Shown here: positions 50,958-55,696 of the stretch, piece by piece
Numbering within the stretch: the first letter of the stretch is position 1
Layout of the letters: every line of letters starts with the position of its first letter
Source of the DNA: Botryllus schlosseri
Taxonomy: Eukaryota
Assembly (NCBI GenBank): GCA_051294905.1
Contig: CM119376.1
Location: 23,870,001 to 23,934,000 of the forward strand
DNA length: 64,000 bases
Direction of reading: 5' to 3'
Made by a program: the position numbers and the translations under genes
The notes under the pieces: generated by a model
Seen by the model: only the letters and a program-made list of their open reading frames with translations
Databases searched by the model: none
Told to the model about the DNA's origin: nothing

Positions 50958-53900
50958 TCAATCCAAGTCAAGCAGCAGTAACTCGGCCTCCAAAAGTTGG
51001 AGATACACAGCGGTGCACTCTATAGAGATTTGTTGTTTCAGTATATCCGAATCCGTTGAAAACGCTTCCCACAAACTTTTAGTAGCTTGTTGATATGATT
51101 TTTGCGATAGATTTCGTCTCAGGGAACATACGCTAAGCAACAAATACGCATGGCTTGGATGCGAATGCAGCGCGTGCCTCGTTTTCCCCGGTTCCGTCTC
51201 CAGGAATCTGTTGAGATATTTCTCCGCCTTCTTGTATTTTTTCAGCCCTATCAAACACTTGGCGATGTTGAGAGTTATTGGCTGTTTCATGGCAGTAAAA
51301 TCAGCGCCTTTTTCTTTCATGATTTTGAGCGACTTCTTGAAACTCTTCATCGCCTGCTTGAAATGCTCTATCGCTAGCAAACAATTCCCGCAGGCGTAGT
51401 AAAAGGATTCCACCGTTTCGGCGTACACGGACCCCAAAACGTCAGAATTATTATCTAAAGCTGCTCTCATATTCGTGGCGCGATCAAGGACTTCAGAAAT
51501 CATGTCAGGTTTGATAAGAGATTTGTCCACTTCCACTTCGGCCTTTGCCGCCACAGCCAAAGTTGATCTGAGCACTATTCCGACGGCGGATACCATCGAG
51601 TCATCATGATTGTCCATCGATTCCATGTTCAAGCCATCCTGGAACGCAGTACTCGCCATGAAGACGGCTTCTTGATAGTTTCCAAGGCTGAAACTACACC
51701 GGGCAGACTTGACTCGAGCGTGAATCATTGTGTAATCCTCGTAAGCTCGACTCTTCCTCCGACGTTCTTTGATAGCAGAACCCCGATTTAGGTATGAGTT
51801 TGCCTCTTCCCACCGTCCTAGTTTGGCTAGACATATCCCGATGTCTTGTATGATAGCGTTCGAATCAACGTATACGATACTTGTAATATCCAGGGCGAGT
51901 TTCTCTTGCAATTCCAGCGCGTCGTTTAATAATGTCAATGCTCTTTCGTGGTTTTGAACTTTCATCCAACAACTCGCCGTCGTAGCCGTCAGGCTTGCAG
52001 TTTCCTGAAGTAAATCCGTCGATAAGTCTACATGCAGTTTCAGTACCTCGTAAATATCAGCCAGGAAGTCGAGAAATGGTATTCGCTGATGCTGATTCGG
52101 TTGAGGTACATTTGAACTGTCTGCTTTACTCAGAAACTGTTCGACGACGTATTTCGCAATCTTCACGCAACAATGCAGAACCGATATCTTTGTTGTTTGA
52201 CTTTGCTGTGCCAGCCAATCTTTCAATGCTTCAATCGTACTGTTCTCCCTTTCAGCAGTACATCTGTACAAACTACCGGCAAAAACAATTATAGCGCCCG
52301 ATATACTAAAAGCATCTCGGATGTTGCAGTACTTCGCTGCTTGACAAAAGTAATCGCAGTCTTGCACGCAACTGTTTCTCAGACACTCATCGCCGTCTAT
52401 GACATCAAGAATATTACGACTTATTGACTTCTCCGCATTTCCATTGTTTGGACCGCCGGAAAGTTCAACGGTTGATTTACAGAGATTTAATATTTTTCCG
52501 TATCCTTTAGTTCTGAAGAGACCGGTTTGGATAACACGGATGAGTATGGACTTATCTCTTTGGAGTTCATTGCCAGTAAAGATGTATTGCTGACACAGGG
52601 TGTCGAATGCCAGACTAGCATGAAAAACGGCCTCTCGTTCGCAATCCTGTTTACGTGTTTCTTTTCCACCATTGTGCAACGCCATCATTGGTGACATAGA
52701 TCGTGATATCACCGTAACGCCGGTTTGTATCATACTGAGTATAGTCGAGTCGTTAGCTTGAGTTCGCAGAAGAGAGGAAATCGACTCACAAGCTTCTTTG
52801 CTAGCTTCGCCTCCTCTGTTCTGCCACAGTTTACATTGGGCTGAGATCAAGAGCACTTGGGCCGTAGTATAAGTAGACAGCGAGCTTGCAGACTTCATAA
52901 CGTCGTCGCAATATTCTTGTGCGGTCTCAATTTCATTCATCTTGAAGTAACAATCTGCTAGCTGCAGCGACCACATGAGTTTGTGCTCTTCGAGGCGTTT
53001 CTCCTCCCCTTCACTCATATCGGTAATTGACGACGCCAATTCCAACGCCTTTTCTAAAATTTTAACGCACTCACTGAAGTTTCCCAATTTGAAAAGACAA
53101 TTACCCTGTCTGGTCGATGCTTTAAACATGATTTCATGTCTTTTTGCGGTCATTGATTCGAACTGCGAAAGCAGTTCTGCGCTCGCAAGATAAGACAAAT
53201 TGTAATCCTCAAGGTAATAATGGGATTCGCCGATTCCGTCTAACACTTCCAAATATAATTCGTCGCCTTGATGCGAAAACAAATCCTTTCTGGACTCAAA
53301 TGCCTTTTTTACCTGCTCGAGATGGTCTCTTGCTTGCGAATAATTTTTCAGCTTCAAATTGTTTATTCCAAGCAGATACTGAATAAAATGGTAAAATTTT
53401 GACTGATCTACTTCGGGGAGCGTGCACAATACAGCCATGCTACGTTTTAATGTGGCATTTGCCTCGTCCAGGCGTTGCACTTTGCTGAGGCAAAGTCCTT
53501 TCATAAAATGTTCAAAAGCGGGATTGGTCCTTTCGTGACCCTGCGAGCTCGCACTTTCAAGAATGTCCAGTGCATCCTGATACCACCCGAAATAGGATAA
53601 AATCTCTGCCTTATCGGCGATGTCTTCCATCTCTATAGGCAAACTTTTAATTACTGAAATATTACCGGATGAATTCAACAAGCTATTCTTTACTTTCTGA
53701 ATCCCGGATAGCACGAACAGCAGTTTTATTACCTTTTGTTTCTTCAAGCTGTTGCAAGTGGATGTTTTGTTGTCATCGGCATTACGCGACAAAGACAAAG
53801 AGCCTCTCATGCGGCTTTCACACGCGATTGCAAGACCGATTTGTAGACTACAACCGGCTTTGTGATCGAGGAATCCTTTTGATATAAGAGTTTTAACAAT

Positions 53901-55696
53901 TGCGAAGGCTGAATTTTTCTCGATGTGTCCAATGTGACCGAGGGCGTCAACTAATTGAAATATTTCATCACCAGAAATAGAAGACGCTTCTGCAACATCG
54001 TTATTCTCCACGAATGCACTATGAAACGAAAAATTCTTCGGCTCGAGCTTTGAAAGCTTTTCAAGAATAACATTTTTGAAATTCGACCCGTCAACTCCTT
54101 TGGAGTATATTTCTTTACGCGTGCGTTTCTTGAATTTCTTGTGTACGCTGTCACTTCCCGCGATGTGTCGAGTTCTAGTCAGCATTTGCGCTAAATACTC
54201 ACCATAAGATTCATCGCGTTGACAAGCTATTGCGACCATATCGTCCACGGTCTTTATCAGTGATATATTTATATTCATAGGTGTTATTGATTTCGCGACG
54301 GCAAAATCGTAAGATGAATCCAGCCATTGTTTTGCAAAAGATTCCGATCCATCTCCACCAGTTTTGCTTTCATTCTTAGTTTGTATATTTCCAGAGAATA
54401 GGATGACTTGGAATATCAATAAATACCATTGAAAGTACTCGACTGTTTCGGCGTAATTTTCTTTCTTTTTGATACTGTTTTCCAGTACAACTGCTGTGAA
54501 TAAATCATTATTTGGTGGAAAATCACCAGATCCACATGTTCCCAAATTGAAATGACTAAATTTACATGGCGGTGATCCTAGAATATCGACGCATATCCCA
54601 GAAATGCCCTTCTCAAGATCCGCATAGTCATCAGTAAACGAAGATGAAATGTTTTTAATTTTCGATACGTATTTTTCGAGACTTTCTTTTGTTTCCTTGT
54701 TCGGTATGATCTCATCGTTCTTTAGCTCCACCTCCAGGCGTTGTCGCATGACATCAACTTTCGTCTGTACTGTTCGCGACGCCTCGTACAGGTCACTTGA
54801 AAGAGATTTGCCGCCAGATAATCGCAATAATTTTCGGTGAATACTTTTCATTTCTTTCAAAATTTTTGAAGAATTGCGACAGGTGCTTTCAAGAGATGCT
54901 CGAAGAAATATGCAGGCCTTCAGTAGACTCGTTTTGTCTGGGATGTATTTAGCGTTAACTCTCGCCAATTCAGCGAATATCTGTGACTTTTCTTCCAAAA
55001 CGTCACTGCATTCAACGGTCTGGGATAATCTTTCGAACTGTTTGAACAGTGTTCGCTCCTGTATCCACAACGGATCCAATTCCCCTATAAAACACGAAAG
55101 CTGTCAACGTAGGCTACACCACAAAAAAGAGAAATTGATGGAGCACATAAAACAGAATAAGTGGAATCAATTCTTTAACGAAAAATGGGCGCAACGAAAA
55201 GGGACCAATGCCTCTTCTCTTCGAATTTCGTCGCATCAGTTGTTTTCGCAACGTCGCCATGCATCATAAATTTTCACCCCGTCCCTTAATTTTTTATCGT
55301 AGCTACACGCCTATCTTTAGAAACGATTTTAAAATAAGTAGGTATATCCTATAACTTAATGGACTTACCGATTAGCTTTTCTATATCCTTAGCAATATTG
55401 CTTTCCTGAGCAGCTAAATCCATGGTTTCGATGTGGCGAAGGGAGATTTTACATCTTGGTAAAAGTGTGGAAACTGCGTCACTAAATGATTCCTTGTCTT
55501 GGACAGCTTTCAGTAACACATCTGAGATAAGTTGGGCCGCTTTCAGTAGATATTTTTGGTGGCGTACTCTAGAATCCTTGCACGCTCCGCATAAGACTTG
55601 GAAAGCCTTCTCCACCGTAGTGATATAATCCTGATTACCGTATGCTACTTTCGCCTGTTTGATGTTGTCCCTGACAGTCGGTGATCCCAAAAGCAT
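50958..55696 (-). CDS. Large protein (~1484 aa) with a degenerate DUF294/GlnD-like nucleotidyltransferase domain, a helical domain and C-terminal TPR repeats; exons 55369-55696 and 50958-55084
   Basis: The 4.1-kb open frame joins the upstream 115-aa ORF through phase-1 sites ATCG|GTAAGT (exon ends at 55369) and TTTTATAG|GGGAA (exon starts at 55084). The join is 4455 nt, or 1485 codons. Motif CVDILGSPPCKFSHFNLGTCGSGDFPPNNDLFTAVVLE, then many TPR-like helix pairs (QGNCLFKLGNFSECVKILEKALEL, IGICLAKLGRWEEANSYLNRG, CGNCLLAIEHFKQAMKSFKKSL). Confidence 0.8.

What the first reader, a model, noticed from the sequence alone, without database searches (positions are those of the whole stretch)
50958..55696. 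Degenerate nucleotidyltransferase-TPR protein encoded by one 4.1-kb exon: candidate immune or conflict sensor
Seen: in a window of short exons this gene has one giant exon. The architecture is a helical N-terminus, then CVDILGSPPCKFSHFNLGTCGSGDFPPNNDLFTAVVLE, then a helical domain (LIKTVDDM, YLAQML, IAGSDSV, LAIACESRMR), then ~800 aa of TPR-like repeats. From memory this is colinear with a patchily distributed family in amphioxus and other marine invertebrates and in host-associated bacteria, whose consensus is roughly LGPPPCxYAxIGLGSxAxxxxTPYSDLEF (DUF294/GlnD-like NTase plus TPRs). Established: pol-beta-fold NTases need G[GS] and DxD/E metal ligands. Here GS is GT and DLE is DLF, so the second acidic ligand is lost. 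Inference: a catalytically dead or altered NTase coupled to a TPR ligand-binding array, possibly part of an uncharacterised innate-immunity family of retroposed or horizontal origin.
Basis: partly seen in the sequence, partly recalled or inferred. Interest (0 to 1): 0.7.

Follow-up and report, generated by a model that had tools for sequence, protein, structure and literature searches.

The report
Dead GlnE/DrrA-type nucleotidyltransferase fused to TPRs
A sea-squirt gene encodes a 1484-residue protein whose front half is a catalytically disabled copy of a bacterial-type protein-AMPylating enzyme and whose back half is a strongly conserved TPR binding array, so it most likely works as a binding scaffold, and nothing tested here supports an immune-sensor role.

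Summary
A 1373-codon open frame (50958-55079, minus strand) joins in frame to a 328-nt first coding exon (55369-55696), giving a 1484-aa protein.

The front half has no direct Pfam hit. It is nevertheless homologous to the DUF294 (GlnE/GlnD/DrrA-type) nucleotidyltransferase module: hhalign probability 100%, E 1.4e-44. Its model superposes on DrrA and GlnE at Z 20-22.

The catalytic signature is broken. 253 of 271 relatives keep G-S...D-x-E...D. This protein reads G-T...D-x-F, and the segment carrying two further near-invariant Asp is missing.

The same genome holds 15 intact paralogues. This copy has no close duplicate in its own genome. It has full-length colinear relatives from other sequencing runs and from Styela clava.

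Its most conserved part is the C-terminal TPR array (65-95% identity, against 30-50% in the enzyme half). Within-species variants there are mostly synonymous.

So the "degenerate NTase-TPR" reading is right. The immune-sensor and retroposed-origin ideas are not supported for this gene.

The scan already found the canonical family elsewhere on this chromosome (s1-236793). This finding is its pseudoenzyme offshoot.

The parts
55369..55696 (-). Coding exon 1: ATG at 55696, 328 nt, 109 codons plus 1 base. It encodes a helical N-terminal extension.
   Evidence: Sequence read and splice model built. The extension is colinear with P0152 and Styela P0004. An equivalent 127-aa upstream ORF sits on P0001's genomic contig.
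55085..55368 (-). Intron, 284 nt, with GTAAGT donor and ttttatAG acceptor, phase 1.
   Evidence: No RNA joint was captured, so support comes from in-frame joining and colinearity with full-length homologues.
50958..55084 (-). Coding exon 2, the giant exon: 4127 nt including the TGA stop at 50958-50960.
53616..54812 (-). GlnE/DrrA-type NTase module (ORF residues 90-488): long helical hairpin, pol-beta alpha/beta core and helical substrate-binding subdomain.
   Evidence: hhalign against canonical members gives probability 100, E 1.4e-44, 374 columns. AF2 model has pLDDT 78 and pTM 0.82. Foldseek matches DrrA and GlnE. VIA-align gives Z 22.4, 22.0 and 20.0.
54498..54542 (-). Degenerate catalytic motif, G180-X11-D192-L-F194 with T181 in place of Ser. 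The family consensus is G-S-X10-D-F-E.
   Evidence: Alignments. Tally of 271 members. The G-X11-D-X-D motif of DrrA/GS-ATase is stated in PMC12409994.
54273..54380 (-). Low-confidence loop (ORF residues 234-269). It replaces the family segment ETIIPSV...WFYD...RGISFDGMMPHACKFPLGR, which carries two near-invariant Asp.
   Evidence: pLDDT is below 50 for model residues 145-180. There are gaps in A3 and hhalign at this place. Profile positions 139-196 are unmatched in the genome search.
53655..54095 (-). HEPN-like helical subdomain of the NTase module (ORF residues about 329-475), equivalent to DUF294_C.
   Evidence: VIA-align matches to HEPN toxins at Z about 10 on model residues 247-381. DUF294_C hits in paralogues. 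PMC3710099 places DUF294_C among the C-terminal domains of pol-beta NTases.
51030..53612 (-). TPR array (ORF residues about 490-1350).
   Evidence: Pfam TPR_2 at 5.6e-23, TPR_12 at 4.9e-19, TPR_19 at 5.1e-16 and others.
51093..51992 (-). Most conserved stretch of the protein (spliced residues 1141-1440). It is 65-95% identical to P0152 and P0001, and 50-55% identical to Styela over 1141-1260.
   Evidence: Identity profile and invariant columns.
51747..51770 (-). Invariant basic patch KERRRKSR (ORF residues 1104-1111) inside the 95%-identical block. It may be a localisation or phosphorylation signal; that is inference only.
   Evidence: Invariant columns K1104-R1111.

Best explanation
The gene encodes a pseudoenzyme. 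It is a diverged, catalytically disabled member of a family of giant, nearly intronless proteins that combine a GlnE/GlnD/DrrA-type (Pfam DUF294) protein-nucleotidyltransferase module with a C-terminal TPR array. Shown: homology, fold, loss of conserved active-site residues, no close duplicate in the genome, colinear relatives in other ascidian data, strong conservation of the TPR C-terminus, and purifying selection. Inferred: it no longer transfers nucleotides. Instead it acts through binding. The C-terminal TPR surface holds a conserved endogenous partner. The retained but inactive NTase and HEPN-like module serves as a structural or ligand/substrate-docking domain, possibly modulating or competing with the 15 active-looking paralogues in the way a pseudokinase does.
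For: Eight of 8 same-genome paralogues hit PF03445 above its cutoff, and 5 show DUF294_C matches (3 above its cutoff). 74 of 80 aligned relatives hit DUF294 and 23 hit SidM_N. hhalign of the window clade against canonical members gives probability 100, E 1.4e-44. The model matches DrrA and GlnE at Z 20-22 over about 305 residues, well above the next tier at Z 10. 253 of 271 members have G-S/D-x-E/D, whereas the window has G-T/D-x-F and a gap. Profile positions 139-196 are missing. The clade stem branch is 1.65 substitutions per site against a median tip of 0.4. TPR residues 1141-1440 are 65-95% identical against 30-50% in the NTase half. Within-species variants are 18 synonymous to 11 nonsynonymous against 22% expected synonymous, p = 3.5e-6. 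The 1484-aa frame is intact and colinear with P0152 and Styela P0004.
Against: No biochemical data exist for any family member, so even the intact paralogues are only presumed enzymes. The first Asp (D192) and the G-X11-D spacing are retained, so nucleotide binding or some atypical chemistry cannot be excluded. The AF2 model is driven by an alignment made mostly of canonical NTases, so the fold match is not independent of the homology. The partner of the TPRs is unknown. Transcription is only suggested, not proven. The variant tally uses 29 of about 138 differences and ignores transition bias; p is still 0.013 if 40% synonymous is assumed.
Confidence: 0.7

Rival explanations
1. Immune or conflict sensor. 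The TPR array recognises a pathogen-derived ligand, and the dead NTase module acts as a signalling or oligomerisation platform within a lineage-expanded innate-immunity family.
For: The wider family shows traits often seen in invertebrate immune expansions. There are at least 18 loci in this genome, some in tandem clusters (C9:24.93-24.95 Mb, C6:17.36-17.42 Mb, C2:8.38-8.43 Mb), and two are frame-split. About 977 clusters exist in databases, often several per contig. The same architecture occurs in intracellular bacteria.
Against: This gene itself has no close paralogue. Its TPRs are the slowest-evolving part, and its polymorphism is mostly synonymous. No death, TIR, NACHT or CARD domain appears among the 25 Pfam families listed for 52 relatives. 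No expression data link it to haemocytes or infection.
Confidence: 0.15
2. Still an active nucleotidyltransferase that uses non-canonical ligands, or one with a changed reaction such as a hydrolytic or de-modifying activity like the GlnE N-domain.
For: D192 and the G-X11-D spacing are conserved in all three clade members. The module is under enough constraint to keep about 42% identity and many invariant positions. GlnE shows that one fold can run opposite reactions (PMC12409994).
Against: Two or three of the conserved acidic positions are lost, and differently in each clade member (F, L, L at the Glu position; T, A, E at the Ser position). No compensating acidic residue is conserved across the clade. 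A whole conserved segment of the core is deleted.
Confidence: 0.1
3. A decaying gene or pseudogene that merely happens to remain open.
For: Catalytic residues are lost and the branch is long. No splice joint was recovered from RNA reads.
Against: The intact 1484-codon frame has a chance probability of about 1e-39 for exon 2 alone. Full-length colinear relatives exist. A 60-residue block is 95% identical. There is an excess of synonymous polymorphism. Contig coverage is 3'-biased in transcriptome-sized runs.
Confidence: 0.03

Closest known systems
Legionella pneumophila DrrA/SidM N-terminal adenylyltransferase (AMPylase) domain (PDB 6yx5, 3nku)
   Same: It is the best structural match to the model: Z 22.4, rmsd 4.0, 304 of 339 residues. 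It has the same two-part module, a pol-beta core plus a helical subdomain. 23 of 80 relatives hit Pfam SidM_N. The motif frame G-X11-D-X-[DE] is the same.
   Different: DrrA has an intact G-X11-D-X-D and AMPylates Rab1 (PMC12409994). Here the last acidic ligand is Phe and a core segment is deleted. DrrA is followed by GEF and PI4P-binding domains rather than TPRs. Sequence identity is about 12%, and there is no direct sequence-level hit in the PDB.
E. coli GlnE (glutamine synthetase adenylyltransferase), both NTase domains (PDB 1v4a, 3k7d); GlnD
   Same: Fold match at Z 22.0 and 20.0 over 306 residues. All top AlphaFold/Swiss-Prot matches are GlnE or GlnD. It belongs to the same Pfam-level group of pol-beta NTases with HEPN-related C-terminal domains (PMC3710099).
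   Different: GlnE is a bacterial metabolic regulator with two active NTase domains and no TPRs. The window protein is an animal protein with one inactive-looking domain.
Neochlamydia NEX2 gene family (F-box, sometimes OTU, then DUF294, then C-terminal TPRs)
   Same: It has the same DUF294 plus C-terminal TPR arrangement and is a lineage-expanded family of 50 members (PMC4209131).
   Different: It is bacterial and carries N-terminal F-box/OTU domains that are absent here.
Canonical ascidian DUF294-TPR paralogues: 15 intact loci in this genome, Ciona intestinalis LOC144747086, Phallusia mammillata LOC100184710 homologue, and scan note s1-236793
   Same: Same overall architecture and giant-exon gene structure. 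Homology over the whole N-terminal module.
   Different: They keep G-S/D-x-E/D and score 296-370 bits against the family profile, while the window gene scores 103 + 68 bits with a central gap. The window gene also has an extra 110-residue N-terminal extension encoded by a separate exon.
Styela clava XP_039258937 (LOC120335497, 1499 aa)
   Same: It is the closest named relative. It is colinear over residues 12-1474 at 32% identity, including the exon-1 extension. It is sister to the window clade in the tree with SH-aLRT 91. It is also catalytically degenerate (G-P, K-x-E, E).
   Different: Different residues are substituted. Whether the loss of catalysis is shared ancestry or independent is not resolved.

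Membership tests
Pfam DUF294 (PF03445) / GlnE-GlnD-DrrA class pol-beta nucleotidyltransferases | Significant direct match to the PF03445 (or SidM_N/GlnE) profile | tested here: not met
   No Pfam or NCBIfam hit on ORF residues 1-560 even at E 10.
Pfam DUF294 (PF03445) / GlnE-GlnD-DrrA class pol-beta nucleotidyltransferases | Demonstrable homology to proteins that do match PF03445 | tested here: met
   hhalign probability 100, E 1.4e-44, 374 columns, against 30 canonical members. 74 of 80 aligned relatives hit PF03445. 8 of 8 same-genome paralogues hit it.
Pfam DUF294 (PF03445) / GlnE-GlnD-DrrA class pol-beta nucleotidyltransferases | Pol-beta alpha/beta core plus helical (HEPN-related) substrate-binding subdomain, as in DrrA and GlnE | tested here: met
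   Foldseek: DrrA at E 1.4e-5 with TM 0.58/0.67, then GlnE. VIA-align Z 22.4, 22.0, 20.0. Caveat: the model rests on an alignment of the same family.
Pfam DUF294 (PF03445) / GlnE-GlnD-DrrA class pol-beta nucleotidyltransferases | Catalytic motif G-[GS]-X10-D-X-[DE] | tested here: not met
   The window reads G-T-X10-D-L-F. The Ser position is kept in 74 of 77 and the Glu position in 74 of 77 other members. 253 of 271 members keep the full signature.
Pfam DUF294 (PF03445) / GlnE-GlnD-DrrA class pol-beta nucleotidyltransferases | Further near-invariant acidic residues of the core (the Asp of WFYD and of SFDG in this family) | tested here: not met
   The segment is deleted or unalignable in the window clade. 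Which of the two Asp is the third metal ligand was not determined.
Pfam DUF294 (PF03445) / GlnE-GlnD-DrrA class pol-beta nucleotidyltransferases | Nucleotidyl-transfer activity | not testable with these tools
   It needs an enzyme assay.
DUF294-TPR giant-exon family of ascidians and intracellular bacteria | Colinear architecture: helical N-terminus, NTase module, C-terminal TPR array | tested here: met
   48 of 52 relatives hit DUF294 and 31 of 52 hit TPR_12.
DUF294-TPR giant-exon family of ascidians and intracellular bacteria | Coding sequence carried almost wholly by one very large exon | tested here: met
   The window has a 4127-nt exon 2. Paralogues have uninterrupted frames of 731-1307 aa.
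Lineage-expanded innate-immune receptor families | Multiple recent paralogues of the gene itself | tested here: not met
   The next best match in the genome is 27-37% identical and covers only about 130 residues. The clade has a single representative in G000.
Lineage-expanded innate-immune receptor families | Rapid diversification of the ligand-binding repeats | tested here: not met
   The TPR C-terminus is the most conserved region at 65-95%. Polymorphism is 18 synonymous to 11 nonsynonymous.
Lineage-expanded innate-immune receptor families | Association with death, TIR, NACHT or CARD signalling domains | tested here: not met
   None appears among the 25 most frequent Pfam families of 52 full-length relatives, nor in the window protein. 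Eight rarer families were not displayed.
Lineage-expanded innate-immune receptor families | Expression in immune cells or induction by infection | not tested
   No suitable data were examined. Read laying gave only weak expression evidence.

The most novel reading that the evidence does not exclude
Ascidians, and perhaps other marine invertebrates, may possess an unrecognised third class of animal protein AMPylases/nucleotidylyltransferases of the bacterial GlnE/DrrA type, alongside FICD and SelO. On that reading, this conserved gene without a close duplicate would be the system's dedicated pseudoenzyme regulator. It would dock the shared substrate or partner through its invariant TPR surface and so tune or antagonise the active paralogues.
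Probability: 0.15. Interest if true: 0.75.

Novelty: new variant of a known kind. Interest (0 to 1): 0.45.

Why it matters
According to the review read here (PMC12409994), GlnE/DrrA-type adenylyltransferases are known as bacterial enzymes and effectors. Five literature searches found no description of an animal DUF294-TPR family.

This gene shows that the animal family has been resident long enough to produce a conserved pseudoenzyme lineage. In that lineage selection has moved from the active site to a TPR binding surface.

That provides a natural inactive control for biochemical work on the family. It also provides a defined, highly conserved surface (spliced residues about 1141-1440) with which to search for the pathway's partner.

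The practical value is moderate. No function is known for any member, and the more striking finding, the family itself, was already recorded by this scan.

Tried and rejected
- **Direct family scans.** Pfam and NCBIfam scans of the N-terminal 560 residues returned nothing. Homology had to be reached through same-genome paralogues and profile searches.
- **Word-based homologue search.** It found only two relatives. The exhaustive profile search found 340.
- **PDB sequence search.** The profile of canonical members against PDB sequences gave no hit at E <= 0.1. I therefore could not map family columns residue by residue onto DrrA or GlnE. Which of the two lost Asp is the third metal ligand remains undecided.
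- **RNA evidence.** No splice joint was reported. Of 17 raw RNA reads in X23, 16 fitted only partly. One contig of X2 crosses the acceptor into the intron. Contig coverage in runs of transcriptome-like size (10-120 Mb) is 3'-biased, which suggests mRNA, but those runs are only guessed to be RNA. Expression is therefore 'likely, not shown'.
- **Taxonomy of the wider family.** The Atlas feature search returned only bacterial DUF294 clusters and one ciliate-labelled cluster. ENA and Logan records carry no organism names. The amphioxus claim was not tested.
- **dN/dS between orthologues.** Not done. A small polymorphism tally was used instead.
- **Pseudogene reading.** Rejected (see rivals).
- **Recent retrocopy reading.** Rejected, because a coding intron is present and conserved, and giant exons are shared by all paralogues.
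- **Known TPR protein orthologue.** Considered and rejected. The only TPR matches are generic repeat families plus weak similarity to LGN/Pins, FKBP51 and TTC21 repeats.
- **Second structure model.** The model of an intact paralogue showed the segment missing from the window protein as a mostly coil region of moderate confidence. It did not clarify the geometry of the lost residues.
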